From the IMG/VR virus record IMGVR_UViG_3300043411_000921, positions 177,400-241,399 of that record: a DNA stretch of 64,000 nt; one strand, given 5' to 3'. Of this stretch, positions 6,925-59,290 are shown one piece after another (the stretch's first letter is position 1; the number at the start of each line of letters is the position of its first letter). Both the position numbers and the translations under genes were made by a program. Under the pieces are notes generated by a model. That model had not been told where the DNA came from. It did no database searches and saw only the letters and a program-made list of their open reading frames with translations.

Positions 6925-7953
6925 TTACTTCTTCTTCCTTGATCTTACAGTCTCTGTAAATAGACCAGAAAGGGGTGCATGAGCATCATCATCCAATCCA
7001 AGCCTGTCTGCAATGTTCAGCATTCCTCTATCTTCCGCAGCATCCCCAGCCCTTGAAACTCTTGTGTCTCCGAGGGAAGGGAACACCCCCTGATAACTCG
7101 GACCCGACTCCCCAAGAGGGAACAGGATTTCTCTTATTGATTCCCCTTTGGATCCCTCTTCTGGTAATGTTCCACTAGACAACATCCCTGACAACTTTCT
7201 CATCGGGTTTTCTCGTGTGTTCTCCAAGAAGACGTAAGCGAGGGCATCACACGTCACGGATCCTTTTGCGAGCACCTCTTGTTGATATTCGTAGGTGTCC
7301 TCCCCGACCTCCAGGTACTTCGCAGCCTCAAACATGTTGAAAAAGAAGCTGTTTTCCTCGGTCTTGCACCTTCCAAGGACAACAAATCCCTTGGGAATAT
7401 CACCTTCCATGCGAACCTGACCAAAAAGCTTGGGCATGGACTCTTCCCTCCTGGACCAACTGGTGATATTATTCCCGGCTCTAGGTGACATAATAGCGCC
7501 ACGAACGACTCCTTCCTTACCAGGAGTCGTCAAGCCTGTTAGACGCCTCAGATAATCCTCCTGGATGCCAAAGAGAACCCTCCAGGCATATCCCTCTCTC
7601 ACCTGAAAGAATTTCTTGTACCAACCCTGCTCCTTCATCTTCCACATCAGGTCAACCATTTTTTCCAGGCCATCCCTGTTGTTCCATGAATAGTAGTTGC
7701 CAAGAGCAGCAATCAACCTCTTTTCTTCGGGAGAATCCTCTTCCTGAATATTTTCCTCGTAAACGTTCTTCCTCATCCACCCAAAAAGATATTCCCCAAA
7801 AGGTGCGTCTTTCGGAGCTTCTGGTGGAGGAGAATCCTTCACAACAGCAACCTTCTTTTTTGGTTTGGGTGGCAGCCAAGGCTTGTCTGGATCAAACTCC
7901 CAATCATCCCATCCGTCACTTTCCCATAAAAACCTTGAAATTCTAGGCGTCAT
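6925..7953 (-). CDS. putative R-S-E clade ADP-ribosyltransferase-like protein
   Basis: AWRVL ... ITSWS ... YQQEVL in the order of the R, S-x-S and Q/E-x-E motifs. Confidence 0.45.
   Translation of the reverse strand: MTPRISRFLWESDGWDDWEFDPDKPWLPPKPKKKVAVVKDSPPPEAPKDAPFGEYLFGWMRKNVYEENIQEEDSPEEKRLIAALGNYYSWNNRDGLEKMVDLMWKMKEQGWYKKFFQVREGYAWRVLFGIQEDYLRRLTGLTTPGKEGVVRGAIMSPRAGNNITSWSRREESMPKLFGQVRMEGDIPKGFVVLGRCKTEENSFFFNMFEAAKYLEVGEDTYEYQQEVLAKGSVTCDALAYVFLENTRENPMRKLSGMLSSGTLPEEGSKGESIREILFPLGESGPSYQGVFPSLGDTRVSRAGDAAEDRGMLNIADRLGLDDDAHAPLSGLFTETVRSRKKK
7148..7175 (+). repeat. co-oriented motif (family B), copy 1
   Basis: TTGGATCCCTCTTCTGGTAATGTTCCAC. Confidence 0.8.
7471..7575 (+). repeat. 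family A element, copy 2 (inside the ART-like CDS)
   Basis: TAGGTGACATAATAGCGCC at 7482; GATAATCC-TCCTGGATG at 7559 (offset 77). Confidence 0.6.
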
Positions 7954-7958
7954 CGAAA

Positions 7959-7964
7959 TAACTA
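7959..7964 (-). promoter_or_regulatory. late promoter motif TAGTTA, probably leaderless
   Basis: 5 nt before the ATG at 7953. Confidence 0.6.
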
Positions 7965-7998
7965 GAATCCCTCAAATACCCACGCCACACTCGTTCCC

Positions 7999-9168
7999 AT
8001 GAAGTTGAAATACCAAAATCAGACAGTAGACATCGTTCTAGGAATGGCCTTCGGTGATGAAGGAAAGGGAAAAGTGGTTGACTATCTTGCTGAGAATTAT
8101 GACTATGTTGTTCGGTTCAATGGAGGGAACAACGCTGGGCACAGTTTGAAGGTTGGCAACTTCAAGACTTCCGTTCATGCACTTCCTTCCGGGGTTTTGC
8201 ATCCACACGTTTTCAACGTGATTGGGAACGGCTGTGTTGTGAACCCAAACCAATTGGCAGATGAGATTCAAAAGATTGGGGCTGGGAGTTTGCAAGGGAG
8301 AGTTTTTGTTTCAGATGCTGCTCATGTGATCACACCTCAGAATATTGAGGAAGATTGCAAAGGTGGAAGCAAAGAGAGGATTGGAACAACGGGAAGAGGG
8401 ATTGGTCCGACTTATGCAGCAAAGATGAATAGAACGGGACTGAGAATGGGAGACCTTCTCAAAGGGGAAGGGAGAGAACTCTTTTCCCAAGATGTTCTGG
8501 ATGTTGTTCTTCCTTTGATCACAAACACCACGAAGCTGCTAAGAACAGCTTGTGATTCTGATGCGAGGATTTTGTTGGAAGGAGCACAAGGTTGTGCTTT
8601 GGATATTGACCACGGGACTTATCCATACGTCACCAGCAGCAATTGTTCCGTTGCTGGAGCACTTTCTGGCACTGGGCTTTCTCACAAAAACATTCGACGT
8701 GTGATTGGAGTTACCAAAGCTTATTCAACAAGAGTTGGAGAAGGTCCATTCCTTTCTGAAATTTTTGGGGAAGAAGCAGAAAGACTTCGTGCTGCTGGAA
8801 ATGAGTACGGAACAACCACTGGAAGACCTCGTAGAGTTGGTTGGTTGGATGCCAAACAACTTCGTGAAGCTTGTCAAATGAATGGTGTTGATCAACTCGT
8901 TGTAACCAAACTTGATGTGCTTTCAGGATTGCCTTATGTTGAAATTGATCACGGTGGGCCAAAGGAAACGAAATCGGGGGCACTCGTTTTCAAAATGAAA
9001 AACCCACAATATTCTAGCTGGGTTTCTATCCCTGAAACCACAACGAAATACTCTGACCTTCCCAAAGAAGCACAGAACTTTGTTGATATCATTGAAAGTG
9101 CAGCATCAGTTCCAGTAACACACGTCTCCATCTCTCCAGATAGATCTGGAACTCTTCCCAGACCATGA
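7999..9168 (+). CDS. purA: adenylosuccinate synthetase
   Basis: GDEGKGK, GGNNAGH, IGTTGRGIGPTY, EGAQG..LDIDHGTYPYVTSS, GTTTGRPRRVGWLD, TKLDVL. Confidence 0.97.
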   Translation: MKLKYQNQTVDIVLGMAFGDEGKGKVVDYLAENYDYVVRFNGGNNAGHSLKVGNFKTSVHALPSGVLHPHVFNVIGNGCVVNPNQLADEIQKIGAGSLQGRVFVSDAAHVITPQNIEEDCKGGSKERIGTTGRGIGPTYAAKMNRTGLRMGDLLKGEGRELFSQDVLDVVLPLITNTTKLLRTACDSDARILLEGAQGCALDIDHGTYPYVTSSNCSVAGALSGTGLSHKNIRRVIGVTKAYSTRVGEGPFLSEIFGEEAERLRAAGNEYGTTTGRPRRVGWLDAKQLREACQMNGVDQLVVTKLDVLSGLPYVEIDHGGPKETKSGALVFKMKNPQYSSWVSIPETTTKYSDLPKEAQNFVDIIESAASVPVTHVSISPDRSGTLPRP

Positions 9169-9542
9169 CAACAACTGAAGATTGGTCATTCAAACCAGGA
9201 GACATTTTCATTATCCCCGCTTCGCATTCATCTGATTGGCAGAATCTATACGACAACATTGGTCGGTACTCTGGCAGCAAATACTTGCAGTTGACCTATC
9301 CTGCTGAGACTCGTCAACAGCCAATCCTTTCCGAAATTGAGATTGATGAACTTTGTTTCTTCTTCAACACCAGAACCCTTGGTCCGAATGGGAAAATCGT
9401 CTTTCTAGGCTTCTCACAGAAAAACCCAGAGACAATGGGTTTGTTCATCAACTCAGAAGGAGCAGTGATTGAAATTGAATTGCTGTTTTTCGAGGAAGAT
9501 GTTGTTGGATATCTCCAGAAAATAGAAGTGGAAAGTGATTAA
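9165..9542 (+). CDS. paralog family protein 1
   Basis: FKPGDIF ... KIVFLGFS..P.T.GLFINSEG..EIEL shared with neighbours. Confidence 0.75.
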   Translation: MTTTEDWSFKPGDIFIIPASHSSDWQNLYDNIGRYSGSKYLQLTYPAETRQQPILSEIEIDELCFFFNTRTLGPNGKIVFLGFSQKNPETMGLFINSEGAVIEIELLFFEEDVVGYLQKIEVESD

Positions 9543-9876
9543 GCCCGGAGATGTTTTCGTTGAGATCATCGGCAAACGCATACGAAAGTCGCAAAGAAAA
9601 CTGAGAGTTTCTTGGTCTGTCGAAATGAGAGACGATATGAGGGCATTCTATAACGTCATCGGACCAGTGATTCCCATTAATTTCCTTCACCCAGAAGGTT
9701 GTGAAAACAACAAAGTCGTTTTCTTGGGATTTAGTAAAACCAGACCCAAGACAACTGGCATGTTCATCAACTCTGAAGGTTCAATTGAGGAAATTGACTT
9801 AGAGTTCTTTGTTGAAGAGATCGTTGGCAAATTCATAACAAAGCTGGAAACAGAGGATAATGAAGATGTTGAATGA
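9535..9876 (+). CDS. paralog family protein 2
   Basis: IKPGDVF ... KVVFLGFS..P.T.GMFINSEG..EIDL. Confidence 0.75.
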   Translation: MIKPGDVFVEIIGKRIRKSQRKLRVSWSVEMRDDMRAFYNVIGPVIPINFLHPEGCENNKVVFLGFSKTRPKTTGMFINSEGSIEEIDLEFFVEEIVGKFITKLETEDNEDVE

Positions 9877-10222
9877 AAGCGAAGAATCGTTTCTTGGTGT
9901 TTTTGAATTGAATCCGCAAAGAAAGTTTGGTTTGGAAATTGGTGCGGCGGTCATGGTTGCGGTCATGGTTGTTGCTGACCAAGATGTTGTTGGAACAAGT
10001 CCAGAAGGATTTCCTCTTGTTTTGAGAAATCTACAAAGCGTTCAAATTCCAAGTCGGCTGATTGATTTTGTTCTTGGTTCTCCGATCACGGCCATCACAA
10101 AACATCCAACATACTACATTTGCATCAACAAAACTGGCGATACAATCGCCATTGAAAAACATCTTTGGGAAACCACGGTCAAACAGAAGTTGCAACGAGT
10201 GGCAGAAACAACGAGCGTATAG
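9860..10222 (+). CDS. hypothetical protein (possible distant family member)
   Basis: ICINKTGDTIAIE weakly echoes the family motif. Confidence 0.6.
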   Translation: MKMLNESEESFLGVFELNPQRKFGLEIGAAVMVAVMVVADQDVVGTSPEGFPLVLRNLQSVQIPSRLIDFVLGSPITAITKHPTYYICINKTGDTIAIEKHLWETTVKQKLQRVAETTSV

Positions 10223-10231
10223 AAAGAAAAA

Positions 10232-10567
10232 ATGGAAAACGAATACAATCTCACCCCTGGAAAAGTCTTTTCAGTCGAACCAAACATTTCAAAAAATCTA
10301 TTCAAAGCCTTTCATAAACCGGGAACGATGTCATGTGCCATCATGGCACATGCTCAATTGTCGCCACCTGGATTTGCTGAGAATCTTGTGAAAACTGGGA
10401 AGCTGTTGGGTGGAGCTGATGCGATTACCTTCCTTGGTTTTGTGGATGATTCATTCGAGAAAGGTTTGTTTGAAAATTCTCGTGGAGAAAGGGCAGAAGT
10501 TTTCTTGGGACCAGAGATTGACCCACACCTCGAACTTGTTTTAACGGACAAGGCAGAAACTCCTTGA
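10232..10567 (+). CDS. paralog family protein 3
   Basis: LTPGKVF ... ITFLGFV...GLFENSRG..EVFL. Confidence 0.7.
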   Translation: MENEYNLTPGKVFSVEPNISKNLFKAFHKPGTMSCAIMAHAQLSPPGFAENLVKTGKLLGGADAITFLGFVDDSFEKGLFENSRGERAEVFLGPEIDPHLELVLTDKAETP

Positions 10568-10592
10568 CCGGATCGTGGGAGTGTGGTAGAGT
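10564..10592 (+). promoter_or_regulatory. sigma70-type promoter, probably leaderless
   Basis: TTGACC-N17-TAGAGT with TG extension; ATG 6 nt downstream. Confidence 0.7.
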
Positions 10593-10598
10593 CCACAC

Positions 10599-10823
10599 AT
10601 GCCAGAGAAGATTCTAGGAACAGTAGTCTTCAACAAGGATTTTGACATCTACAAACAAGGTGACACGGTACAAATCACGAAGGCGATGTATTCTCCCTTT
10701 GGAGAGATGTACTTCAAAATCTCTGGGACAATCTGCTGGGTAAGCACCAAAGAAGTTACGAACATCGACGTTGTAGCCGCACGTCGTTGCCAGTACATCA
10801 ACATCTACAAAGACGCGGCTTAG
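10599..10823 (+). CDS. hypothetical protein
   Basis: 74-aa ORF directly after the promoter. Confidence 0.65.
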   Translation: MPEKILGTVVFNKDFDIYKQGDTVQITKAMYSPFGEMYFKISGTICWVSTKEVTNIDVVAARRCQYINIYKDAA

Positions 10824-10848
10824 TTCTCAAAGAAAGGTTTATTTCAAC

Positions 10849-11520
10849 ATGGAAAAGGTTATTCTTAAGTCGATTCTTGATCCTGAGTCCAAGCAGTATT
10901 GTGTCAAGGATGGCACTGCTGTTTCTCTGGAGTTTCATTCTCCCTTCAATGTTCTGGATGGTGATTACATTGTTACAGAATCCAAAGCCGGTCGTGGTCG
11001 TGGAGGCAGCCGCCTCCTCAAGATCACTTCTGTTTCTGATCCTGCAATGGTGATTGACACTCTCCAGGTGGAAGGTGAGCCCAAGGCACTCGGTACCCCG
11101 ACCAGTGAGTATTTCAAGTGTGTTGTTGTTGATGGCACTCGCTATGAGGGTGAGAACATTCAGACTCCTGCACCTTCACCCTTTCATCGTGAGCCAACTG
11201 GTTTTTTCCAGCGTTCAGATCAGCGTGTGAAGGCGGAAGCTCGTGTTGCTGGTGCCACTGTAACCAAGAGCCAACTTGCTACCAACGCTCTCCAGAAGAT
11301 TCTTTCTGAGAATCCGAATGCTCATATTCTTCTGGGCACGCACAGCAACAACAAGGCTCATCCCCTGAATGGAGAGTGGGTTGTCGAGAGTTCAACGGTA
11401 GAAGGCAATGCGATGGTGCTGAACCTCCGAGGACTCAACAACGCCAACCTCACCGCTGAGTTCGATGTCCAGCGAGACATTGGCCTGATTGATCGAATCG
11501 ACACCATTCGCTATTCGTAA
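10849..11520 (+). CDS. hypothetical protein
   Basis: 223-aa ORF with AAAGG RBS. Confidence 0.75.
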   Translation: MEKVILKSILDPESKQYCVKDGTAVSLEFHSPFNVLDGDYIVTESKAGRGRGGSRLLKITSVSDPAMVIDTLQVEGEPKALGTPTSEYFKCVVVDGTRYEGENIQTPAPSPFHREPTGFFQRSDQRVKAEARVAGATVTKSQLATNALQKILSENPNAHILLGTHSNNKAHPLNGEWVVESSTVEGNAMVLNLRGLNNANLTAEFDVQRDIGLIDRIDTIRYS

Positions 11521-11541: not shown

Positions 11542-12210
11542 TCACCTAAACAAATCCTTCATCTTTTGCTTCAATGCCGAGGATGAAGGATTTTCCTTTT
11601 GTCCCACTTTCTCTTCCTTCTCAACAACAGCGGGAACATTCCACAGGGCATGTCTCACAAAATCTGCATCTAACTCTTCCAGGGTTATTTTTGGCTTGGT
11701 TGAAGCTGGCTGAATTGGCAGTGGGGCAATAACATCCAAAGCCATCTCAAGTTCTGGGTCGGCAGCAGCCAAATCTTGTTGGTTTGATTCGGAGGCGTTA
11801 TACGCCTCATTAGCGCCTTCCTTTTTCTCAACGTCCTCTGACCCGTCCAAACTTTTCTCGGGCTCTAATGAGGCTCCTGGAGCGATCTTGGTGGTCTTGA
11901 TAAAGGGAGTTATCAGTTGGGATGGAAGGATCAGTTCCATCTTGATGAGATATGACAAGTTGGGAGAGAAGATGCAGAGTTGATCTGGGAGAGTGAAGAA
12001 AAACTCAGAGAAGTTTTCTGGATTTAGGAATGCTGGGATAAGAACACCAAATCCAGCCTGATCAGAGATGCTCACACGACAAACAATCAGTTCTTTTTCT
12101 TCTTCTGGGAGAGAAAGAAGGAGAGAAGAAATCGTGTTTGGGATTGGGAATTGATATTCCTTGTCTGGTTCGATCAAAACCAAGTCAGGATCTGCTGGAG
12201 TGTTGGGCAT
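11542..12210 (-). CDS. hypothetical protein
   Basis: 222-aa ORF. Confidence 0.7.
   Translation of the reverse strand: MPNTPADPDLVLIEPDKEYQFPIPNTISSLLLSLPEEEKELIVCRVSISDQAGFGVLIPAFLNPENFSEFFFTLPDQLCIFSPNLSYLIKMELILPSQLITPFIKTTKIAPGASLEPEKSLDGSEDVEKKEGANEAYNASESNQQDLAAADPELEMALDVIAPLPIQPASTKPKITLEELDADFVRHALWNVPAVVEKEEKVGQKENPSSSALKQKMKDLFR
11788..11891 (+). repeat. family A element, copy 3
   Basis: TATACGCCTCAT at 11799; TCCTGGAGCGATCTT at 11875 (offset 76). Confidence 0.85.
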
Positions 12211-25906: not shown

Positions 25907-25927
25907 GCCTTGTAACTAGAAAACAAG

Positions 25928-29706: not shown

Positions 29707-29761
29707 TGTTTTATTACTCCCTTTGTTTCTTTCTGTAAATGCGTGTGAGCCTAACTATGGC

Positions 29762-34785: not shown

Positions 34786-34808
34786 GGTCTAAATGCGGAT
34801 AACTAGAA

Positions 34809-36893
34809 CTATTCGCTTGAATTCGTAGGATCCTGTTCCCCAGCCAACCCAAGCAACTCGTTCAACATATTCTCTTCTTCTGTTCCCTCTCTTTGGATCC
34901 CTTTCTGGTTATCCTCCACACCCTCAGACATAATCACCTCATTCCCAGGGGTTTTAACACTGAGAACTTCCGCCAAACCCCTCAAGGAAGACTGCAACTC
35001 TTTTGGAAGGCGCCTTCCGATTCTCCTGGCTCTTGCTTCCTCTTGTTCCAACATGAATTTCCGGGTTCCAGCAATGTCGTAGGGATCCTTGGAATATCTG
35101 TTGCCAGTAATATCCAACATGCTCTTGAAATCAGGAAGAGAGAGAGCACGACTGCCGGTGAATTCTTTACTACCCCCTCTATCGCGCTTAAATGCCTTAT
35201 CCAGGCTGGGCGTTGGGTTGAACCTAATTGGGGTGCTTCCACCCTTTTGAGCGCCCTGGATAATCCCCTGGGTGCCTTTACGGGCCTCCTCCCTTGCCTT
35301 GGCAATTGCCGCTTGGTGTTTCCTCTCCATCTCCTCATTCTCAATTTCCAAACTCCTGACTTCTTTTTTGTCGGGAGCAAAAGGAGAGGTTGGGACTTCA
35401 TAGTTCGCCTTGTCGAAAATATCAACGCTGCTTTCCATACTCTTGTCAAACACCGGATTCTCCAGGATCATCTTCAATTCAGCAATCCTGAGTTGGTCTT
35501 GTTTGGCTTCTTGCCAGATGGTGTTGATCTCTTCTGGACGAAGACCAAGAATCTCTCTCTGAATCCAAGGGAAGGAAATGATTCCGGTTTCTTTTCCAAT
35601 ATCAAGAGCCTTGGAGGCTGTTTCAATCTTGCTGGAGATGAGGGCAAGCTTTTGTTGGACGGCAACCGTGGAAGGGTTGGAGAATTTCAGTTCAAAGTTG
35701 AGGAGGTCATCTCCACTGAAACCAAGAGAATAGAGATGGATCATTGCGAGCTTGTCGAGTTCGGCAACGATGATTTTTTGAAGGTGAGAGATGGTTCTGG
35801 AGAAGCGAATATCTTCTTGGGCGAGTGTTGCTTTACTAGAGATGGCTTCGTCGTATGTCAGATAAGCTCTTGGAACCATCAAAGCGGCAATGAGTTTTTT
35901 GTGGATGAACTCGACATCCTCGATTGCCGTTGCGTTTGTAGCTCCTGCCAAAGATTCAATTTTTGTCAAACTGTTTGGTCTTGCTGGGAGGTAGTAGTCC
36001 TCATCAATTGCAAGAGGGTTGTAACGAAAGTCTTGTCTGCCTTGTTGCTGTTCAATGACAGAAGCACCTTTCATTCCCTCTTTGACAGCTTCCATATAAG
36101 AAGGAATGTCGTTCGGGTGAACAGCAGAAACATCAACGTAGAAGACTCTTCGTTCTGGTGATCGAACAAGTCGATAAACCAACATGGAGTCTTCTAACAT
36201 AACGAGCTGACGGAATGGCCTCCTGGCACTCTCCAGGAAGCTTGTTCCATAAGGAAGGAACAAGTCATTTCCCAGAATTCTAAAGTGAAGCATCTGCCAG
36301 TTTTCGAGATACTTCCCTCCTCTGGAGATGAGTCTAAACCTCACGGCATAAGGATCGTTTCGATCAAACCCTTCTTCTCTTTCCACTTCATTGACAGGAA
36401 GAGGTTCGCAGTTGATTACTCCATAATTCGGAACAACTTCAACATACATGAAGTAGTCGCCGTTCTTGACAAGGTTCCTGATCATTCTTCTTCCATTGAA
36501 CTCAATGTTCATCACGTCATAGAAGAGTTCTTCCAGGGCTTTTTGAACCTGTTGGTTGTCACTGTAAATGTGAAAGGTGTTTCCGTTTTCATCGGAGGCA
36601 CAGCTTTCATCGGCATAGATGTTTAGTGCGGTTGCGATGTCTGGGAAACTCTCCATTTCAGCAAACTCGGCATATCGACTCATGCGATCAAGAACGCCGT
36701 AAGCGCCAAGAACAGAGAATGGCGAAGCTTCTTTTTTGAATCCAGACGCACCGTAATAACCAAGGTTGTTTTGGACGACTTGGTTGTCGTAGTAGTTTTT
36801 GTAGTCTTGTCCTTTTACTTTACGTCTGATTGCTGGACCTGATCGAAAGAGTCTTGTGAGACGTTGGTAGAAGGTTTTTTCTTGCTTTGCCAT
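34809..36893 (-). CDS. portal protein (T4 gp20-like)
   Basis: YGTSFLE.AR...QL.MLED.MLVYRLVRSPERRVFYVDV, EDYYLP, LAQEDIRFSR. Confidence 0.95.
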   Translation of the reverse strand: MAKQEKTFYQRLTRLFRSGPAIRRKVKGQDYKNYYDNQVVQNNLGYYGASGFKKEASPFSVLGAYGVLDRMSRYAEFAEMESFPDIATALNIYADESCASDENGNTFHIYSDNQQVQKALEELFYDVMNIEFNGRRMIRNLVKNGDYFMYVEVVPNYGVINCEPLPVNEVEREEGFDRNDPYAVRFRLISRGGKYLENWQMLHFRILGNDLFLPYGTSFLESARRPFRQLVMLEDSMLVYRLVRSPERRVFYVDVSAVHPNDIPSYMEAVKEGMKGASVIEQQQGRQDFRYNPLAIDEDYYLPARPNSLTKIESLAGATNATAIEDVEFIHKKLIAALMVPRAYLTYDEAISSKATLAQEDIRFSRTISHLQKIIVAELDKLAMIHLYSLGFSGDDLLNFELKFSNPSTVAVQQKLALISSKIETASKALDIGKETGIISFPWIQREILGLRPEEINTIWQEAKQDQLRIAELKMILENPVFDKSMESSVDIFDKANYEVPTSPFAPDKKEVRSLEIENEEMERKHQAAIAKAREEARKGTQGIIQGAQKGGSTPIRFNPTPSLDKAFKRDRGGSKEFTGSRALSLPDFKSMLDITGNRYSKDPYDIAGTRKFMLEQEEARARRIGRRLPKELQSSLRGLAEVLSVKTPGNEVIMSEGVEDNQKGIQREGTEEENMLNELLGLAGEQDPTNSSE
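34893..34919 (+). repeat. family B motif, copy 2 (inside the portal 3' end)
   Basis: TTGGATCCCTTTCTGGTTATCCTCCAC. Confidence 0.8.
35178..35282 (+). repeat. family A element, copy 7 (inside portal)
   Basis: TAAATGCCTTAT at 35189; GGATAATC-CCCTGGGTGCCTTTA at 35266 (offset 77). Confidence 0.65.
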
Positions 36894-42522: not shown

Positions 42523-42540
42523 TTCCCTTACAATCCTTCC

Positions 42541-42568
42541 TTGGATCCCTCTTCTGGTTATCCTCCAC
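42541..42568 (+). repeat. family B motif, copy 3 (intergenic)
   Basis: TTGGATCCCTCTTCTGGTTATCCTCCAC. Confidence 0.85.
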
Positions 42569-42595
42569 AACCGGGCATCACACCAACGAGAAAAC

Positions 42596-48116: not shown

Positions 48117-49046
48117 ATGACTCTTGGTCTTTGTTGCCACTTCCTCGAACAGCACGGTTCCTCTTACCAAAACTCCATCAATGAAAAGTCGATGCAGCTT
48201 GGTAGGTTCCGTGCTGGTGCCTATTCCCAATCCCATATTCACAACCTCTATACCAATAACCTCCAAGAAATCATTCGGCTGCTCCCAAAGCTCATCTCCA
48301 ACAACATCAAGTGTTTCAGAATCTCCAGCAGCACCTTTCCGCTGTTCGAGTTCAACAAGACTTTGATTGAGAACAGCAAGGATATTAGAGACCTTCTTAA
48401 TCGAGCGGGAAGGGGTTATCTGGGCGCTGGAATTAGGATGACTACCCATCCTGGTCAGTTTACCGTTCTAAGCTCAGATAAGCCTCCTACGGTCACGGCG
48501 GCTATCACCGAGTTGGATTTCCACGGTTGGGTATTTGACGCTATGGGATTTCCTCAAACTCCCGAATATGCCATCAATGTCCACGGTGGAAAATCTGATC
48601 GTCACCAACAACTCGTTGGTGGGATTTCCCGGTTGTCTGCCGGTGCCAGGAAGCGTTTAACGCTTGAGAATGATGAGAGTTCTTACAGTGTTCGCAAATT
48701 GCTTGCTGTTTCTGAGGAGACTGATGTTCCAGTTTGCTTTGACAGTCACCATCACACCTTTAATGAAGATGGGTTGAGTATGGAGGATGCTTATGGTCTT
48801 TCTGTTTTGACGTGGAAACGTCGTGGCTGCAAACCTCTCCAGCACATCAGCAACTCAACTCCAAATCTTCCACAGACAAGCTCGTTCCAGGACAAGAGAA
48901 AACACAGTGATTTCATTCACCACATTCCCAAGTGTCAGTTGGATGGCTTGCTAAAGGAGGAGGTTGATGTGGAAGTGGAAGCCAAGATGAAAAACTTGGC
49001 TTTGTTGAAGATGCGGGAGATGCTGCTAAAACATTCCGATGTTTAG
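48117..49046 (+). CDS. uvsE: UV DNA damage endonuclease
   Basis: LGLCC, FRISS..FP, HPGQF.VL.S, INVHGG, LENDE, FDSHHH, HIS, KHSD, EAKMK. Confidence 0.93.
   Translation: MTLGLCCHFLEQHGSSYQNSINEKSMQLGRFRAGAYSQSHIHNLYTNNLQEIIRLLPKLISNNIKCFRISSSTFPLFEFNKTLIENSKDIRDLLNRAGRGYLGAGIRMTTHPGQFTVLSSDKPPTVTAAITELDFHGWVFDAMGFPQTPEYAINVHGGKSDRHQQLVGGISRLSAGARKRLTLENDESSYSVRKLLAVSEETDVPVCFDSHHHTFNEDGLSMEDAYGLSVLTWKRRGCKPLQHISNSTPNLPQTSSFQDKRKHSDFIHHIPKCQLDGLLKEEVDVEVEAKMKNLALLKMREMLLKHSDV
48397..48501 (+). repeat. family A element, copy 11 (inside uvsE)
   Basis: TTAATCGAGCG-GGAAGGGGTTAT at 48408; CTCAGATAAGCC-TCCTAC at 48485 (offset 77). Confidence 0.55.
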
Positions 49047-51017: not shown

Positions 51018-51039
51018 AGCCGTTTGCCTATTTACAGGC

Positions 51040-52695: not shown

Positions 52696-53970
52696 TCAAG
52701 GGACAGCTATCATTTTTCTAGTGGCTAGGTCAAAACCCTTTGGCAATTTTGTCTTAGCGTCGAATGTTGCTTCACGCAGCCCAATCGCATCTTCCAGGTT
52801 GCTCCCAGTAAAATCAACATCGTAAAACGCAGCACCAAAAAAATCAACATCCTGCAAATAAGCATTTCTCATGTGAACTCCTGAAAAACTTGAATGTTTC
52901 AAACTTGTGGCAAACAAGTCAACAGAGTTAAGAACACATTGAACGAAGCCACAAGCGTCCATTTTTGCTTCCCTAATCTTGGCACCCCCAAGTTGGCAGC
53001 GTGTGAACAAGCCTTTGAAAAGCTGGATTTTTGAAAGGTTTGCCTTTGCGAACCTGCAATTTATGAAGTTTATCCTTTGAAGGTTGGCGCCTGTGAAATC
53101 TGATCCTGAGAAATCCACGTCTTCAATGATCATGTTTTTTTCACTGAGGCCAATGGTTTTCAAGATTTGCTTGTTTTCCATGTTGCGGAAATCTGATCCC
53201 TGAAAGTCAAGAAGCTTTTTATCTTTCTCGAACAGAGAGGTGATGTGGCCCTTTGGAGCATCAAGAATGCTTGGTTTGTTATTCTTCTCCACGACACTTA
53301 CAATTTCGACTTGGGCTGTGTTGAAGAACACGGCTTGGTTTGGTTCGAGGTGATGGATAATTTGAAAACCATCATCAACAACCCCATCATATCCAAGCAC
53401 CTTCCAGAGAAGGTAAGACCATTTTCCGGTTGGGCCGCCACCACGATCTTTCTTCTGTTCGGGTTGAAAATCTGGATCAGCAGAATCGGCACCCGCCAAC
53501 AATCTTGTAATGTTCCAGATCATTGAACCGTGAAGATTTTGATTGTCTCTTGCCCCTCTTCTTGCATACTCAATCGCTTTTTGTGAAAATCCCCAAGCGA
53601 CAAGTTTTTCTACATCTTGCTTGAGGTTTTCCGCGGAATGAGTCGTGAAATCCAGCAATCTCGCTGTTGGTTTTGGTCTGATTACAACAGCATAAGGTCT
53701 GTTGATCGCAAACCTCATCATCTTCTTTCGATCAAGGAAGTAAGCATAGAAGCCAATAGGTGTCTTGTACTGATTCTTGAGATACAAACCCATCCTGGGA
53801 TAATCTGAGAAGTGAACAAACAAGTTCTTGTCTGTCTTGTTTTGCTGTTCAAGTGCAGCAAGTTGTTCTTGCCAAGGAGTTGGTTTCACTCCCAGTTCCC
53901 TCATGTGCCTGGAGATTTCAAGAAGAGTGAGAGACCTGATAAGAGGGGAAAGAGAATTGCTGCTGCTCAT
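52696..53970 (-). CDS. ART-like N-terminal domain fused to pentapeptide repeats
   Basis: FVHFS..PIGFYAY..GYDGVVD..EPNQAVFF; C-terminal VDFSG/SDFTG/ANLQR/ANLSK repeats. Confidence 0.7.
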   Translation of the reverse strand: MSSSNSLSPLIRSLTLLEISRHMRELGVKPTPWQEQLAALEQQNKTDKNLFVHFSDYPRMGLYLKNQYKTPIGFYAYFLDRKKMMRFAINRPYAVVIRPKPTARLLDFTTHSAENLKQDVEKLVAWGFSQKAIEYARRGARDNQNLHGSMIWNITRLLAGADSADPDFQPEQKKDRGGGPTGKWSYLLWKVLGYDGVVDDGFQIIHHLEPNQAVFFNTAQVEIVSVVEKNNKPSILDAPKGHITSLFEKDKKLLDFQGSDFRNMENKQILKTIGLSEKNMIIEDVDFSGSDFTGANLQRINFINCRFAKANLSKIQLFKGLFTRCQLGGAKIREAKMDACGFVQCVLNSVDLFATSLKHSSFSGVHMRNAYLQDVDFFGAAFYDVDFTGSNLEDAIGLREATFDAKTKLPKGFDLATRKMIAVP

Positions 53971-54038
53971 GGGAGATAAGTAAATTCATCCTTGAGAGGA
54001 AGATAAAAGTCAAGAAGACATATAAGAAGTCTTCCCTC

Positions 54039-54061
54039 TCCCTCTTCTGGTTATGTTCCAC
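54039..54061 (+). repeat. family B motif, copy 4 (intergenic)
   Basis: TCCCTCTTCTGGTTATGTTCCAC. Confidence 0.75.
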
Positions 54062-54082
54062 TCGTCCTTTGTTATCAAGGAG

Positions 54083-55714
54083 TTACGCGACACCCCCAAC
54101 TTTCCAAGAATTCAATGCCGAGATCAAATTGGGAAGTTCATCGTTCAGTTTTTTCAAAGCGCCTCTGAGATTTTCAATACTCGTTTTGAGAAGCTCGGCT
54201 TGTGCAGTTGGAGCGCCGCTGGCGCGACCCAATGGAGAATGACTTGAAACGTTTGTTCCTCTAAGAACGTTTTGCATAGCAGGGCTCACATCCTTTCCCG
54301 AAACCACTGCTTGAGTACCTCGATTGCTGGGCACTTGTCCGGGTGCTGCGGAAATGGAACTGGTCTCCACATTCTCCAAAAGATCAACGTTCGTTCCACT
54401 TTTGGGGACAACACTATTCAATGTCTGGAGAGCGGAAGCAAGGGCCTTCGTGCCATCCTGCAACGCAACAATCGCATTCTTTTTTGCGTTTCCGATAGCG
54501 TTGAGACCGTCTTTTAATTGCTTGGAATTACGCTGGGACAGGTTTCCACTTGGTCCGTAAGCAACCTCGGATGCCCCAGAAAGGACTTGCAAGTTGTCGT
54601 TGATGGTCTTGGTGGTATACCTTGGGGTTTGACTCCCTGGCCCTTCCCAGTATCTTCCACCTTCAGCAAACACAAACTTTTTTGCAGCCCAAGCAACCAA
54701 AGCAGCAAGCCCAGCCAAAATTGCTCCAATCAAGAACTGTTCATCCAACCTTCTTTGGGAAGTTGTTGCTTCTGCTACGAGTTCTCTGTTTGTTCCTGTG
54801 AGACGAGTTGTGAGTTGCTGGAGAGATCCGACTTCTGTCACAAGGATTTCACCAAAGTTGTTGATGTCCTGAATAACCTTGGCAAGTGCGGCACGGTTTT
54901 CTTCAACCTTATTTTTTCCCGCTTCATTGGGAGCAACACCTGGAACAGGAGCAACACCTGGAACAGGAGCAACACCTGGAACAGGTGGCAGCGTGGCTGT
55001 TGACACCGGCCCGCTCGTTTCACCGATAAAACGTTGCTGATACCTTTCAAAGTCACCTTCGGTCAGAATTCCGTTCTCAACCAAACTTTTCAAGCTTGAG
55101 AGAAGATTCAACACTTCGCTAACAGCCGACTGGGGTTGTGCTGATACTGGTTGAGTTCGTGCTCGTGCCAGAGTACCAGGAGAAGACGACACTTGTGCGC
55201 CAACGAGTGACTCAGTATCTTTGAGTGCCTTGGAAAGTGTTTTTGCTGAATCAACAACACCTGTGTTGCTTGAGTTAAAGAACAAAGGAAGAACCTTAGC
55301 ACATGCAGAAGCAACAATACCAGCTTGCCTTTTTTGCTCTGCTCTCCAGTTATCAGCAGCTTTTTCTACCGCTTTGAATTCTTTGGTTGGGGCAATCTTG
55401 TCAAAAATGGCCTTGGCTTCTTTTGTTCTTTGACCTTCGAAAGCATCAAGGAACCAAGCCAGGAACCAGATGGGAGTTTCTTTGTCGATGCGGGCGGAGT
55501 TTTCCCTCAACTCTACCAAGGCAGCTTGAATTTGCTGTGTCTTTTGACCTTCGTCCGTTGTTTGTTTTCCAACAGCGGACTTGAGTTTGTCACCCAGGGA
55601 GAGTTTGATCAGTTTGGCAACGTTGTTGTCTGAGAACAGAACGTTTGCCATTGCACTGAAGGCGCCTGCTGGGCCGATGACATCAGGGCCATTGAATGTG
55701 ATTTTGACTGCCAT
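54083..55714 (-). CDS. Ala-rich helical protein with one hydrophobic segment, putative ejected/internal protein
   Basis: 543 aa; ILTE and LDE sites; FLIGAILAGLAALVAWAA; TACTTA at 55727. Confidence 0.7.
   Translation of the reverse strand: MAVKITFNGPDVIGPAGAFSAMANVLFSDNNVAKLIKLSLGDKLKSAVGKQTTDEGQKTQQIQAALVELRENSARIDKETPIWFLAWFLDAFEGQRTKEAKAIFDKIAPTKEFKAVEKAADNWRAEQKRQAGIVASACAKVLPLFFNSSNTGVVDSAKTLSKALKDTESLVGAQVSSSPGTLARARTQPVSAQPQSAVSEVLNLLSSLKSLVENGILTEGDFERYQQRFIGETSGPVSTATLPPVPGVAPVPGVAPVPGVAPNEAGKNKVEENRAALAKVIQDINNFGEILVTEVGSLQQLTTRLTGTNRELVAEATTSQRRLDEQFLIGAILAGLAALVAWAAKKFVFAEGGRYWEGPGSQTPRYTTKTINDNLQVLSGASEVAYGPSGNLSQRNSKQLKDGLNAIGNAKKNAIVALQDGTKALASALQTLNSVVPKSGTNVDLLENVETSSISAAPGQVPSNRGTQAVVSGKDVSPAMQNVLRGTNVSSHSPLGRASGAPTAQAELLKTSIENLRGALKKLNDELPNLISALNSWKVGGVA
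54930..54985. repeat. 3 x 18-bp tandem repeat encoding PVPGVA
   Basis: GGAGCAACACCTGGAACA x3. Confidence 0.9.
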
Positions 55715-55725
55715 ATTGTTGCAGC

Positions 55726-56079
55726 CTAAGTATTATCCTTCACCTCCCGCATGAAACGATAAATCCCAGCTTTCTTTACATCTGTGGTTGCTGGATTCAC
55801 AATCCCGGTAAAAACCCAGCCAATCATCTGAGTCTCACAGACTAACACCTTCAAATAACTCAAGGTCTTCTTGGGAACTTCAACCAAAACAAACAGTTGT
55901 TTTGGTTTGAGGTAAACGACCATACTCCAGCGTTGATGTGGAAGACCTACAACCCTTCTTCCATGACGCGAACAAAGAAGAGGCCGTGCCGTGTCAGAGA
56001 CAAACTCATACAATCCACCAACCCGAACATCTACTTCTGGAATCTGAACCTTTTTACGAATCCGCTTGTTGTTTGACAT
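55726..56079 (-). CDS. hypothetical protein (SH3-like)
   Basis: ORF divergent from the sigma gene; start chosen at MSNNKR. Confidence 0.55.
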   Translation of the reverse strand: MSNNKRIRKKVQIPEVDVRVGGLYEFVSDTARPLLCSRHGRRVVGLPHQRWSMVVYLKPKQLFVLVEVPKKTLSYLKVLVCETQMIGWVFTGIVNPATTDVKKAGIYRFMREVKDNT

Positions 56080-56143
56080 TTCTCTTCTCAATGACTTGAA
56101 ACAATCTTATACAATGCTTACAGTTGCTTCTGGAGCAAGAATT

Positions 56144-56953
56144 ATGTCAATCCAGAGACGCAGAACCAAGAGATATCCAAACACCCCCAGGCCCAACAAC
56201 AAGGAAGATCATGAACTGTTTCTGAAATATCAAGGAACCAAAGTTCACAATGAGAATGGTAAACTCATCTCCTCAGACTTGAAGCTGAGGAATCAGCTAG
56301 CAGATCGTAATGCGAGGCTTGTGACTTTTATGGTCAACAAGTTTTACAGCCGCAAGAAGAAGCATCTCGAACTCAGAGACGATCTTCTTCAAGAAGGTCA
56401 CATTGGTTTGGTCCATGCTGTTGAAGGTTTCAAGCCTGAAATGGGAATCATGTTCAGCACTTATGCTGGAATTTGGATTCGGCAAGCTATCAAGACCTAC
56501 CTTCTGGAACACGATCCATTCATGCCCATTCCAGGACACGTCAGAACAGCCAACAACAAACTCGTTAAGCATTGCAAAGAAGTCGGCAAACCCACCGACA
56601 ATTTCTTCATTTTGACTGATGAGGAATTGGCAACCCTTGAAATCACAAAGAACATGGTTGATTGTGTTGAAGCAGCAAGAAAAACCGCAAAGACAAAAAC
56701 CGTGTTTGTTGATTTCTTCCAAGACCTGAGACCAAACTCGGAAGTTTCTGAAACGAGTTTTCTGAAAGGACTCCCAGCCGAGCAAGATGATCGGTTTATC
56801 AACAAGCGTCTTTTGCTGGCAGCGAAGAAGGCATTTACCCAACTTACTCTGAGAGAGCGTTGTGTTCTTCTGGAGAGGTATGGAATTGATTCCAGGCCAT
56901 ATTGGAATGGCGAAACAGTTTTGAGTGAAGAGGATAACGAGGTGACAAAATGA
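56144..56953 (+). CDS. sigma70-family RNA polymerase sigma factor lacking region 4.2
   Basis: RNQL...NARLV, DDLLQEG.IGL..AVE.F.PE.G..FSTYA.IWIRQAI, IPGH, LT.RER.VL..RYG. Confidence 0.88.
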   Translation: MSIQRRRTKRYPNTPRPNNKEDHELFLKYQGTKVHNENGKLISSDLKLRNQLADRNARLVTFMVNKFYSRKKKHLELRDDLLQEGHIGLVHAVEGFKPEMGIMFSTYAGIWIRQAIKTYLLEHDPFMPIPGHVRTANNKLVKHCKEVGKPTDNFFILTDEELATLEITKNMVDCVEAARKTAKTKTVFVDFFQDLRPNSEVSETSFLKGLPAEQDDRFINKRLLLAAKKAFTQLTLRERCVLLERYGIDSRPYWNGETVLSEEDNEVTK

Positions 56954-57572: not shown

Positions 57573-57588
57573 GTAGCTCTAGGAGACA

Positions 57589-57816: not shown

Positions 57817-57836
57817 ATAGTTACCGCTCATAGATC

Positions 57837-58541
57837 ATGAGCATGGGAGAAAGAATCGGTTTGGGGGACTTCGGCAAACTCGCAAGGCCGAAAACTCTCA
57901 CCGATGTTTTTCTTCTGAACCCATCTGCAACTCCAGACCTCGAAGACTGGTGGATTGAAAACAGAAAACTTTCCTACTCCTCAACAACATTCAACAAAGA
58001 TATGTTGGCTGGGACTTATGGGATGAACCTAGATGTTCTCTTTTCAGATCTTTCTATTGATTCCTACCACTGCCAAATAACCTCATTCCTTGTTCTTGTT
58101 TCCAGCGAGTATAAACTCCTGACGACACTAGAACAGATTGAGTTCTACAAGACAAGGAAGCCAAAAGCCAAGGTAAAAGCTGTTGGTGTTACCATCTTCA
58201 AAAACTCACAAGAGGTTTGGAACCCAAATGATTCGGGATTGGTTTGGTTGTTCAGGCCAAGATGTTTGGTGAGGCTGGAAGATGTGAAATTGTTTGAGGA
58301 AGTTGAAACAGGAGATGTTCTTCAGTTTCAAAAGACGAATGGAATGGTGATGAGGGTGTTGAAGGTTCGCCGCAAAAGATTCTACCTGAGCACCTCTTGG
58401 ACAAATCGTTCAATCACTTATTTGACTGGAACCACAGGAAAACTTCTTCAGTTGAATCCAGATAGACCTTTCAAACTTATCAAACTCTCTTCGTCTCAAT
58501 CCTCAACACCGCCATCTTCGTCTTCTTCATCATCAACTTGA
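57837..58541 (+). CDS. hypothetical protein
   Basis: 234 aa; TAGTTA at 57818. Confidence 0.7.
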   Translation: MSMGERIGLGDFGKLARPKTLTDVFLLNPSATPDLEDWWIENRKLSYSSTTFNKDMLAGTYGMNLDVLFSDLSIDSYHCQITSFLVLVSSEYKLLTTLEQIEFYKTRKPKAKVKAVGVTIFKNSQEVWNPNDSGLVWLFRPRCLVRLEDVKLFEEVETGDVLQFQKTNGMVMRVLKVRRKRFYLSTSWTNRSITYLTGTTGKLLQLNPDRPFKLIKLSSSQSSTPPSSSSSSST

Positions 58542-58681
58542 GAGTCTTTTACTTTCTCAACGACACCGATTGCATCTTCGATGATTGCAACTTCGTCTGC
58601 GTCGAGATCGTGCTTGTACTCATCAACAAACTCTTCAAGGCGTTCAGACAGTCGATTCAGAATCTTGGCTCTTGTTTGCAT
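58496..58681 (-). CDS. small acidic protein
   Basis: 61-aa ORF. Confidence 0.55.
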   Translation of the reverse strand: MQTRAKILNRLSERLEEFVDEYKHDLDADEVAIIEDAIGVVEKVKDSQVDDEEDEDGGVED

Positions 58682-59024
58682 TGTGTGTTTGGTCCGTTTC
58701 TTCTGGAAGGGGAGTTACCTGGAAGTTCTTGTCTTTGACAATCCAACCCGTTCGAGTATCCCCATATAGACAGTTGTAATAGAAATGACCATAAGAATCC
58801 ACCACTTCCCTCAACAACACAAAAACTTCCGAGAATCCCTTCAATCCCCACGGTTGCACTGCCCCAGTGAGCGCGGTTCCAAATTCCGTCGTCGTTGAAA
58901 TTATGGTTTCATTTTTCTTCAAACGCGATTCCAGCAAAAGTTCCAAATCAGGATAAACAGCAACAAACACTGGCTTCCTCGTGTTTCTTCTGTTTTTCAG
59001 TGTGCAAATGGATCCTGGTTTCAT
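58644..59024 (-). CDS. hypothetical protein (SH3-like)
   Basis: MKPGSIC ... CLYGDTRTGWI. Confidence 0.6.
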   Translation of the reverse strand: MKPGSICTLKNRRNTRKPVFVAVYPDLELLLESRLKKNETIISTTTEFGTALTGAVQPWGLKGFSEVFVLLREVVDSYGHFYYNCLYGDTRTGWIVKDKNFQVTPLPEETDQTHNANKSQDSESTV

Positions 59025-59044
59025 GTTCCCTAGCTAGACTCATC

Positions 59045-59290
59045 ATGTTCGTTGCTGAATCTCAGAGATACTATGACCACACCTTCCAGGAAAGCAAGAC
59101 GATCCTAAGAACCCAATATGACTCCCTTCTTTGCTCTCTTCTGGTTATCTTCCACAACGGCTCCCAATACCTCTATTTTTCAGTACCTCCAGAGGTTCAC
59201 CAGTCCCTCCTCGATTCCCCAAGCCCAGGAAAATTCTTCCACTCCAACATCCGAGGAAAATTCAGGCACGAACGTCAAACCAATATCTAA
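59045..59290 (+). CDS. KTSC domain protein
   Basis: S..I....YD....LLVIFHNGSQYLYFSVPPEVH..LL.SPSPGKFFH.NIRG. Confidence 0.85.
   Translation: MFVAESQRYYDHTFQESKTILRTQYDSLLCSLLVIFHNGSQYLYFSVPPEVHQSLLDSPSPGKFFHSNIRGKFRHERQTNI
59134..59155 (+). repeat. family B motif, copy 5 (inside KTSC gene)
   Basis: CTCTCTTCTGGTTATCTTCCAC. Confidence 0.7.

What the first reader, a model, noticed from the sequence alone, without database searches (positions are those of the whole stretch)
7148..59155. Second, strictly co-oriented motif (T)CCCTCTTCTGGTTAT(C/G)(C/T)TCCAC in five copies
Seen at 7148, 34893, 42541, 54039 and 59134, always on the + strand and usually preceded by a pyrimidine-rich tract. Two copies are inside minus-strand genes, one is inside a plus-strand gene and two are intergenic, so orientation follows the genome and not transcription. 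Four copies lie about 300-800 bp left of a family A element (7482, 35189, 43124, 59916). Inference: a polar site such as a helicase/primase loading site, Ter/KOPS/Chi-like signal or nick site, possibly part of the same system as family A.
Basis: partly seen in the sequence, partly recalled or inferred. Interest (0 to 1): 0.78.

Follow-up and report, generated by a model that had tools for sequence, protein, structure and literature searches.

The report
Conserved 35-bp site in jumbo phage
A real 35-base DNA signal occurs 13 times in a 241-kb T4-like phage genome and sits at gene borders without following gene direction. It is probably the docking site of a phage protein, most likely a special promoter, but it is not the one-strand polar site first proposed.

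Summary
The motif is real. There are five copies in the window, all on the + strand, where shuffles give none. The conserved block is about 35 nt (Y-rich tract, GGATCCCTCTTCTGGTTATCYTCCAC, then W-A).

The window is the last 64 kb of a 241-kb viral contig from a distant T4-like phage. Across that contig there are 13 copies, 6 on − and 7 on +, so strict co-orientation is a local effect. The order −−−−−++−+++++ is not significantly non-random (p = 0.12), and GC skew follows the coding strand rather than two replication arms.

The claimed link to family A fails. Three of the four cited A elements score as noise; only 59134→59916 holds.

Copies sit at gene borders, C-terminal tails or inter-domain linkers, both sense and antisense to genes. 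Two related clades carry their own versions of the motif at the same places (portal 3' end, DNA-polymerase linker). At the polymerase site the orientation is flipped in one clade.

The motif is not the late promoter, which here is TA[G/T/C]TTA. It is not an Rfam RNA and not a host repeat.

Best reading (about 0.4): a phage-specific promoter-type signal with a −10-like WATNNT hexamer that often fires antisense. Close rival (about 0.35): a non-promoter protein-binding site, such as a barrier or nick site.

The parts
7141..7178 (+). Motif B copy, GGTAAT variant. It lies antisense inside ORF 6925-7953(-), 234 nt from that ORF's 3' end, and points across the divergent junction (7953/7999) into the + block 7999-11520.
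   Evidence: (PWM 53 bits). In this ORF's reading frame the consensus motif would give a TAA stop; the TTAT→TAAT change removes it.
34885..34922 (+). Motif B copy with a 1-nt deletion. It lies antisense in the C-terminal tail of the gp20-type portal gene, 94 nt from the stop. It is 95 nt from the late-promoter-like TAGTTA of the next gene and points across the portal towards the + block that starts at 37215.
   Evidence: Relatives with 78% identical portals lack this copy. A 63% relative has a motif copy just after the portal stop, in the same orientation.
42534..42571 (+). Motif B copy with a perfect consensus. It is intergenic and sense: it starts 12 nt after the stop of 42247-42522(+) and ends 27 nt before the ATG of 42596-42865(+). 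The primase and Mre11-Rad50 genes follow.
   Evidence: (58 bits)
54027..54064 (+). Motif B copy, intergenic and antisense between two - genes. It lies 21 nt past the stop of 54083-55714 and 74 nt before the start of 52696-53970. It points towards the + block at 56066 that encodes a sigma factor.
59121..59158 (+). Motif B copy at the divergent junction 59024/59118. It overlaps the first codons of ORF 59118-59888(+). A true family A element lies 782 nt downstream, at 59909-60010.

Best explanation
Motif B is the recognition site of a phage-encoded, sequence-specific factor that co-evolves with it. Most likely it is a phage-specific promoter-type signal, not the late class.

In this reading, the hexamer (T/A)ATNNT inside the motif acts as a -10 element, preceded by G at -14. 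The invariant CCAC and the following W-A form the discriminator and start region. The pyrimidine tract at about -17 to -36 is read by a phage factor, in the way T4 middle promoters combine an activator box with a sigma70-type -10. Candidates for that factor are an activator or the phage's own sigma70-family protein at 56066-56953.

Transcripts would start just after the motif and run in the motif's direction. In sense copies they enter a gene whose ATG lies 17-29 nt downstream. In many antisense copies they first run against one or two genes and then cross a divergent junction into a co-directional block. This could give early antisense RNA against late genes, or transcriptional interference.

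Shown here: the anatomy, the copy census, the positions, the clade-specific consensus, and the distinctness from the late promoter. Inferred: that RNA polymerase starts there, which factor reads the site, and any timing.
For: Promoter-like sequence features:
- In copies found through the 5' half alone, the 3' half varies only at three positions. These are the first, fourth and fifth bases of the putative hexamer, while the A and final T never vary.
- Four independent sense copies in three clades end 17-29 nt before an ATG, with a Shine-Dalgarno-like stretch between: window 42547, L001, L227 and L247.
- The L001 copy follows a GC-rich stem-loop, as in the PeSL/PmSL terminator-promoter cassettes of T4-type phages (PMC4122927).

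A factor that co-evolves with the site:
- Each clade has its own consensus shared by all of its copies.
- The phage encodes a full sigma70-family factor.
- The late-promoter-like motif TA[G/T/C]TTA is a separate class. Of 23 TA[GT]TTA sites, 18 lie within 60 nt upstream of a same-strand start, whereas only 1 of 22 TGGTTA sites does.

Antisense copies aimed at co-directional blocks:
- Five of eight antisense copies lie 0.3-2.3 kb behind a divergent junction and point across it into a co-directional block of metabolic or replication genes.
- The portal arrangement recurs in clade Y.

Precedents from the literature:
- T4 middle promoters, and origin promoters whose transcripts form R-loop primers (PMC3016281).
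- Early antisense RNAs over structural genes in phage PAK_P3 (PMC4933390).
Against: - Eight of 13 copies are antisense to the local genes. Three of them (82.7, 89.85 and 120.3 kb) lie 12-19 kb from any co-directional block.
- Among intergenic copies across the clades, the ratio is only about 9 sense to 5 antisense.
- At the orthologous DNA-polymerase linker the motif is antisense in two clades and sense in a third.
- Conservation runs uninterrupted for about 30 nt. There is no variable spacer, no -35 element at the usual spacing, and no degenerate family members.
- In L014 a terminator-like hairpin lies between the motif and the next gene.
- The tendency to sit near divergent junctions is only marginally non-random (my own estimate, p about 0.05-0.09).
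- No transcript data exist.
Confidence: 0.4

Rival explanations
1. B is a non-promoter DNA-level site bound by a phage protein. It could be a polar or direction-indifferent barrier to replication or transcription (Ter/Tus-like or stoperator-like). It could also be a site-specific nick or clamp-loading site, an origin element, or a structural binding site. Gene borders, tails and linkers would then be favoured only because a fixed 35-bp sequence is hard to fit into constrained coding sequence.
For: - Orientation is unrelated to local genes, and at the polymerase site it flips relative to the gene between clades.
- Copies are nearly identical, there are no degenerate members, and each clade has its own consensus, as expected for a high-specificity binding protein.
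- Coding copies sit in the portal tail, a polymerase linker and other C-terminal regions. The reading frame is rescued by a TAAT variant in two copies.
- The orientation order −−−−−++−+++++ has its switch at the convergent junction near 116.6 kb.
- The stronger family A copies show a similar left/right split.
- The core is partly two-fold symmetric (TGG..A...T.CCA), by inspection.
- Phage tf has 14 nick sites on one strand regardless of gene direction (PMC3517423).
Against: - The arm pattern is not significant (p = 0.12). It has exceptions at 174.8 kb and at a degenerate copy near 92.9 kb.
- GC skew tracks the coding strand only, and no KOPS-like oligomers flip between arms.
- Copies lie on both strands, unlike known phage nick sites.
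- No Tus/RTP-like or nickase gene was recognised among the ORFs searched. Only about 65% of the genome was seen.
- T4-type replication, with many origins and recombination-dependent initiation, gives no obvious need for a fork trap (PMC3016281).
Confidence: 0.35
2. B acts at the RNA level. The purine-rich reverse complement carries two Shine-Dalgarno-like blocks (GGAGGA and GAGGGA). In mRNAs of genes that run against B it could serve as a ribosome-loading, pausing or processing signal. In sense mRNAs the pyrimidine-rich form could pair with the downstream ribosome-binding site.
For: - The two halves of B each resemble the 3' end of 16S rRNA (by inspection, recalled from memory).
- In L008, L001 and L247 a downstream purine block can pair with part of B.
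- In clade Y the motif forms a long hairpin with a conserved downstream partner.
Against: - No consistent structure or pairing partner exists in the window clade.
- The two orientations would give unrelated RNAs, yet the DNA is equally conserved in both.
- There are no Rfam matches.
- Distances to the next start codon vary from 25 to 430 nt in antisense copies.
Confidence: 0.08
3. B is a short repeat spread and homogenised by recombination, acting as a module-boundary or gene-conversion sequence as proposed for PeSLs. It would have little function of its own beyond promoting exchange.
For: - Copies within a genome are more alike than orthologous copies between clades.
- The portal copy is present in some lineages and absent in 78%-identical relatives.
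- Copies sit at gene borders. PeSL precedent: PMC4122927.
Against: - Positions are stable across three sampled strains and partly across clades.
- There are no terminal repeats, target duplications or linked mobility genes.
- The TAAT frame rescue indicates selection to keep the motif inside coding sequence.
- Inverted copies in one genome would promote lethal inversions.
Confidence: 0.1

Closest known systems
T4 middle-mode promoters and the PmSL/PeSL promoter-terminator cassettes of T4-type phages
   Same: Both are repeated, well-conserved intergenic elements in a T4-like genome. Both combine a sigma70-type -10-like hexamer with a conserved upstream box in place of a -35, followed by a Shine-Dalgarno sequence and ATG at about 20-30 nt in sense copies. 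One B copy is preceded by a stem-loop (PMC3016281, PMC4122927).
   Different: The upstream box is not the MotA box (TGCTT). Conservation is continuous over about 30 nt. More than half of the copies are antisense to genes or lie inside them. No MotA/AsiA homologue was seen in the parts of the genome examined.
T4 origin promoters (oriF/oriG) and early antisense promoters such as those inferred for phage PAK_P3
   Same: In both cases a promoter's transcript is not an mRNA for the gene it overlaps. It serves as an R-loop primer or as an antisense RNA over late structural genes (PMC3016281, PMC4933390). B copies lie antisense at the 3' ends of the portal and other genes.
   Different: No A+T-rich unwinding element follows B. 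No transcript data exist. Some antisense copies lie in replication genes (DNA polymerase), not late genes.
Localized nick sites of phages T5, phiKMV and tf
   Same: Both are short conserved asymmetric sequences, about 4-14 per genome, placed without regard to gene direction (PMC3517423).
   Different: Known nick sites all lie on one strand of the genome, whereas B is 6-/7+. B is 29-35 nt against 7-20 nt. Nicking was not tested.
Ter/Tus and Ter/RTP polar fork barriers; stoperators of cluster A mycobacteriophages
   Same: All are asymmetric protein-binding sites of 13-30 bp, about 10-30 copies, found in genes and between them, with orientation arranged in two opposed genome arms (general knowledge).
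   Different: The arm pattern here is not significant and has exceptions. There is no skew switch and no cognate binding protein has been identified. Stoperators follow the direction of transcription, which B does not.
Promoters of single-subunit phage RNA polymerases (T7-like)
   Same: Both show continuous 20-30-nt conservation ending at the presumed start site, near-identical copies, and a clade-specific consensus (general knowledge).
   Different: T7-type promoters are all co-directional with genes. No such polymerase gene was found in the roughly 65% of the genome seen, and the phage is T4-like.

Membership tests
One-strand localized nick sites (T5 / phiKMV / tf type) | All sites lie on a single DNA strand of the genome | tested here: not met
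   13 copies in the 241-kb contig, 6 on - and 7 on +
One-strand localized nick sites (T5 / phiKMV / tf type) | A physical single-strand break at the site in virion DNA | not testable with these tools
   Needs alkaline gels, ligase-sensitive sequencing stops or long-read data
Ter-type polar replication barriers | Two oppositely oriented groups of sites flanking a terminus | tested here: inconclusive
   The order is −−−−−++−+++++. The circular runs test gives p = 0.12. The switch lies at the convergent junction near 116.6 kb. Exceptions occur at 174.8 kb and at a degenerate copy near 92.9 kb.
Ter-type polar replication barriers | Strand-composition switch marking origin and terminus | tested here: not met
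   GC skew, including third codon positions, follows the coding strand and shows no two-arm pattern in 11 regions
Ter-type polar replication barriers | A cognate terminator protein (Tus or RTP) | tested here: inconclusive
   None appeared among about 55 ORFs scanned with Pfam/PHROGs, and about 35% of the genome was not seen
Chi / KOPS-type skewed oligomers | Short (5-8 nt), frequent words whose strand bias flips between replication arms | tested here: not met
   B is about 35 nt with 13 copies. No 8-10-mer that is strongly skewed in the right arm shows the reversed skew in the left arm.
T4-type late promoters | A short AT-rich -10 box just upstream of late genes, co-directional with them | tested here: not met
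   In this phage that role is filled by TA[G/T/C]TTA (18 of 23 upstream of same-strand starts). TGGTTA shows no such association, 1 of 22.
T4 middle-mode promoters / PmSL | A sigma70-type -10 hexamer (TAnnnT) | tested here: inconclusive
   TATCYT in most window-clade copies, and AATNNT in the TAAT variants and in clades X and Y. The A at -11 and T at -7 are kept, but part of this invariance was imposed by the search patterns.
T4 middle-mode promoters / PmSL | A MotA box (TGCTT) centred near -30, plus MotA/AsiA genes | tested here: not met
   The conserved box is GGATCCCTCTTC or another pyrimidine tract, not TGCTT. No MotA/AsiA hit appeared among the ORFs scanned.
T4 middle-mode promoters / PmSL | A co-directional gene directly downstream | tested here: inconclusive
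   True for 5 of 13 copies. Five more reach a co-directional block after 0.3-2.3 kb, and three do not.
Family A of this window (about 100-nt hairpin element) | B lies 300-800 bp upstream of an A element | tested here: not met
   The A profile scores the elements at 7482, 35189 and 43124 at E > 6 or not at all. Only 59134→59909 holds. The sequences between B and A-like words are unrelated.
Known structured RNA families (Rfam) | A match to a covariance model | tested here: not met
   Only tRNAs reach the gathering score. Nothing better than E = 0.3 appears around B in the window or in L264.
Host-derived repeat or solitary CRISPR repeat | The same sequence repeated in bacterial genomes | tested here: not met
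   Six scattered single hits in 185,579 species genomes, about the chance level

The most novel reading that the evidence does not exclude
B is a DNA-level polar signal system of a jumbo T4-like phage lineage. A phage protein binds the asymmetric 35-bp site and acts directionally on a tracking machine such as a replication fork, RNA polymerase or sliding clamp, or it nicks one strand. The sites would be arranged in two opposed genome arms that meet at the convergent junction near 116.6 kb, and kept at fixed places (portal 3' end, polymerase linker) whatever the gene direction. That would be a Ter-like or nick-enhancer-like system not described for T4-type phages.
Probability: 0.2. Interest if true: 0.8.

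Novelty: new variant of a known kind. Interest (0 to 1): 0.55.

Why it matters
If B is a promoter class, this uncultivated jumbo T4-like lineage, probably cyanobacterial, runs a transcription programme in which a single highly specific signal drives early or middle genes. The same signal would also launch antisense RNA through the portal, polymerase and baseplate genes. That would be a testable route to temporal control by transcriptional interference.

If B is instead a barrier or nick site, it would be the first such dispersed polar system in a T4-type phage.

Either way the motif is useful. It and the separate late-promoter word TA[G/T/C]TTA give ready handles for annotating transcription units in these metagenome-only genomes. 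The co-evolving clade-specific versions point to a trans-acting factor that could be identified by DNA pull-down.

Tried and rejected
- Coding motif. The copies read in different frames, and one has an indel.
- Late promoter. A different word does that job.
- Sigma70 -35/-10 promoter. No -35 lies at the proper spacing, and consensus-type promoters are not enriched.
- Bacteroidetes-type, sigma54-type and ECF-type promoters. Rejected by inspection.
- Structured RNA or ribozyme. No Rfam hit and no consistent hairpin.
- Host repeat or CRISPR-repeat mimic. The genome scan was at chance level.
- B–A cassette.
- Replication arms seen through GC skew. An early hint disappeared with more sequence and third-position analysis.
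- 'Antisense to late genes, sense to early genes.' This broke down when the 120.3-kb host gene proved to be a DNA polymerase next to gp32.
- Circularity of the genome, inferred from a relative's contig that seems to bridge the contig ends. Only the motif itself aligns, so this is unproven.
- Co-occurrence of B with the phage sigma factor across clades. The scan found close relatives only.
- Calls that gave nothing: a megablast against phages, one exact-protein look-up, and a search for the nearest isolate's paper.


Full report
**1. The observation**

They lie at 7154, 34898, 42547, 54040 and 59134, all on the + strand, against none in 100 shuffles. A position-weight scan of both strands finds nothing else above noise.

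Aligning the copies, with further copies fetched from related contigs, shows that the conserved block is longer than described. It is about 35 nt: a pyrimidine tract, GGATCCCTCTTCTGGTTATC(C/T)TCCAC, then W-A. The flanks are unrelated.

The motif is not a shared peptide. The two copies in minus-strand genes are read in different frames, and the portal copy carries a 1-nt deletion.

**2. What the window is**

The window encodes:
- a gp23-type capsid protein, a gp20-type portal and two giant sheath-like proteins;
- a chaperonin, a primase and a fused Mre11-Rad50;
- a T4-type large terminase and 22 tRNAs.

The nearest isolates are only 33-42% identical in the capsid protein: Microcystis phage Mel-JY01 and Flavobacterium phage immuto.

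An exact-pattern scan of IMG/VR shows that the window is identical to bases 177400-241399 of the 241,399-bp contig IMGVR_UViG_3300043411_000921. It also recovers several strain-level relatives.

**3. Genome-wide census**

Four pattern scans and the fetched loci give 13 copies in the contig:
- on the − strand: 16.3, 37.8, 67.3, 82.7, 89.85 and 174.8 kb;
- on the + strand: 120.3 and 137.5 kb, plus the five window copies.

Relatives also carry a degenerate, coding, + strand copy near 92.9 kb.

The order −−−−−++−+++++ looks like two arms, but a circular runs test gives p = 0.12.

Two further checks give no support for arms:
- GC skew, including at third codon positions, follows the coding strand and shows no two-arm switch. 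An earlier hint from fewer loci did not hold.
- No 8-10-mer that is strongly strand-skewed in the right arm shows the reversed skew in the left arm.

**4. Family A**

A profile built from the six clear A copies finds strong members in the window only at 1801, 11793, 26850 and 59909. The B–A proximity therefore rests on one pair.

The sequences between B and nearby A-like words are unrelated.

The significant A copies are mostly on − in the left arm and + in the right arm. The A-core 12-mer is strikingly over-represented, even inside coding sequence. That shared left/right split is the only remaining link between the two families.

**5. Relation to genes**

Five copies are sense and lie just upstream of genes: a NUDIX hydrolase, a phosphatase, a P-loop protein, the operon with primase and Mre11-Rad50, and ORF 59118. 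Eight copies are antisense.

Fetching more of the genome gave this block map:

| Region | Strand | Contents |
|---|---|---|
| up to 67.3 kb | − | block of mostly small genes |
| 67.9-116.6 kb | + | RNA ligase, sugar enzymes, baseplate, fibres |
| 116.7-138.3 kb | − | gp32, HD protein, family A DNA polymerase, large ORFs, baseplate |
| from 138.4 kb | + | HSP20, dUTPase, exonuclease, DnaB, ribonucleotide reductase |

The change of B orientation from − to + coincides with the convergent junction at 116.6 kb.

Five of the eight antisense copies lie 0.3-2.3 kb behind a divergent junction and point across it into a co-directional block: window 7154, 34898 and 54040, plus 137.5 and 174.8 kb. The other three are deep inside opposite-strand blocks.

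Antisense copies cluster at the 3' end of the gene they overlap, from 234 nt before the stop to 135 nt after it.

**6. Other clades**

Two more distant clades carry their own versions of the motif:
- X: CTCTCCCTCCCTCTC-TGGTAATCCTCCAC.
- Y: a roughly 60-nt version with a downstream hairpin partner.

Copies within a clade share the clade's version. This points to co-evolution with a trans-acting factor, or to homogenisation.

Both clades also show sense and antisense copies at gene borders.

Two positions are conserved between clades:
- The 3' end of the portal gene. The copy is antisense, with the same arrangement of portal, divergent junction and small-gene block. Relatives with 78% identical portals lack it.
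- The linker between motifs A and B of the DNA polymerase. There the motif is antisense in the window clade and in clade Y, but sense in clade X.

In the two copies read in the frame where the consensus would give TAA (window 7154 and the polymerase copy), TTAT is replaced by TAAT. This keeps the frame open while preserving the rest of the motif. It indicates selection to keep the DNA site inside coding sequence.

**7. What it is not**

- Not the late promoter. TA[G/T/C]TTA fills that role: 18 of 23 TA[GT]TTA sites lie within 60 nt upstream of a same-strand start, whereas only 1 of 22 TGGTTA sites does.
- Not an Rfam family.
- No consistent hairpin in the window clade.
- Not a bacterial repeat.
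- Not a one-strand nick-site family of the T5/tf/phiKMV kind, because those lie on a single strand (PMC3517423).

**8. Most likely mechanism**

The robust core is that B is read along its whole length by a specific phage factor.

I favour a promoter-type signal (confidence 0.4) for these reasons:
- The 3' half reads as G(-14)…(T/A)ATNNT…CCAC…start.
- In copies ascertained through the 5' half only, natural variation is confined to the weakly constrained hexamer positions.
- Four independent sense copies end 17-29 nt before an ATG.
- One copy follows a stem-loop, as in PeSL/PmSL cassettes (PMC4122927).
- The phage has its own sigma70-family factor, whose best structural matches are cyanobacterial SigA.
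- The pairing of an activator box with a -10 element is that of T4 middle promoters, some of which serve as origin R-loop promoters (PMC3016281).
- Early antisense RNAs over structural genes are documented in another lytic phage (PMC4933390).

Against it:
- the antisense majority and the three orphan copies;
- the flipped polymerase copy;
- the uninterrupted conservation with no degenerate members;
- a terminator-like hairpin between B and its gene in L014.

These same facts favour the close rival (0.35): a non-promoter protein-binding site, polar or orientation-free, such as a barrier, a nick or clamp-loading site, or an origin element.

RNA-level action (0.08) and a recombination-spread boundary repeat (0.10) are less likely.

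**9. Verdict**

The feature is real, lineage-specific and under selection.

Noticed in passing
window, e.g. 34800-34805(-), 29752-29757(-), 51029-51034(+), 25913-25918(-): The word TA[G/T/C]TTA behaves as this phage's late-promoter box. Of 23 TA[GT]TTA sites, 18 lie within 60 nt upstream of a same-strand gene start (capsid, sheath, terminase and others). The word is depleted elsewhere.
   Followed up: yes
window 56066-56953 (+): A full-length sigma70-family sigma factor (regions 2-4). Its best solved-structure matches are cyanobacterial SigA, which hints at a cyanobacterial host and a phage-directed promoter class.
   Followed up: partly
window 1801-1904, 11793-11893, 26850-26953, 59909-60010 (+): Family A is an imperfect hairpin element of about 100 nt, found at convergent gene junctions. 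Its 3' word TCCTGGAGCGAT occurs 12 times in about 116 kb, including inside coding sequence. It is mostly on - in the left arm and + in the right arm.
   Followed up: partly
L283 13360-14538 (contig 119715-120893, -); L217 2391-3635; L246 2148-3404: A very divergent family A DNA polymerase, below the Pfam cut-off but with motifs A and B recognisable. An HD protein and gp32 lie next to it. A T4-like phage would be expected to use a family B polymerase.
   Followed up: partly
window 61045-63962 (+): A cluster of 22 tRNA genes at the very end of the contig.
   Followed up: no
window 15987-19013 (-) and 19121-22264 (-): Two adjacent genes of about 1000 codons. Both end in a tail-sheath C-terminal domain, so they are paralogous giant sheath-like proteins.
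   Followed up: no
window 43905-47129 (+): Mre11-like phosphoesterase and Rad50/SbcC-like ATPase (gp47 and gp46 in T4) fused in one 1074-codon ORF. In clade Y a Prim-Pol domain is fused to the phosphoesterase instead (L205 10393-13062).
   Followed up: no
window 54930-54985: Three perfect tandem copies of an 18-nt unit (GGAGCAACACCTGGAACA), lying within ORF 54083-55714(-) on its opposite strand.
   Followed up: no
window 40142-41881 (+); L017 688-2070 (+): A GroEL-type chaperonin gene and a second, weaker GroEL-like paralogue just upstream of the window. The second one hosts the only minus-strand B copy of the right arm.
   Followed up: no
window 7999-9168 (+), 48117-49046 (+): Auxiliary genes: adenylosuccinate synthetase and a UvdE-type UV endonuclease.
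   Followed up: no
L001 about 10640-10665; L014 about 4225-4245: A repeated GC-rich stem-loop (CCGGGGGAGGCCCCCC). It lies upstream of B in one locus and between B and the next gene in the other.
   Followed up: no
L143-L152, about 25-50 nt upstream of the gene after the portal: AT-richer relatives (71-78% portal identity) lack B at the portal. They share a conserved intergenic word (AGCTATCTAATATATCTGTAAG) before the next gene, probably their own promoter. Five of them also have a B-like 14-mer inside a scaffold-like gene, coding for SSFGYVPQ or close variants.
   Followed up: partly
window 9430-9508 and 9749-9827: A 79-nt direct repeat at 71% identity, reflecting two small paralogous neighbouring genes.
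   Followed up: no
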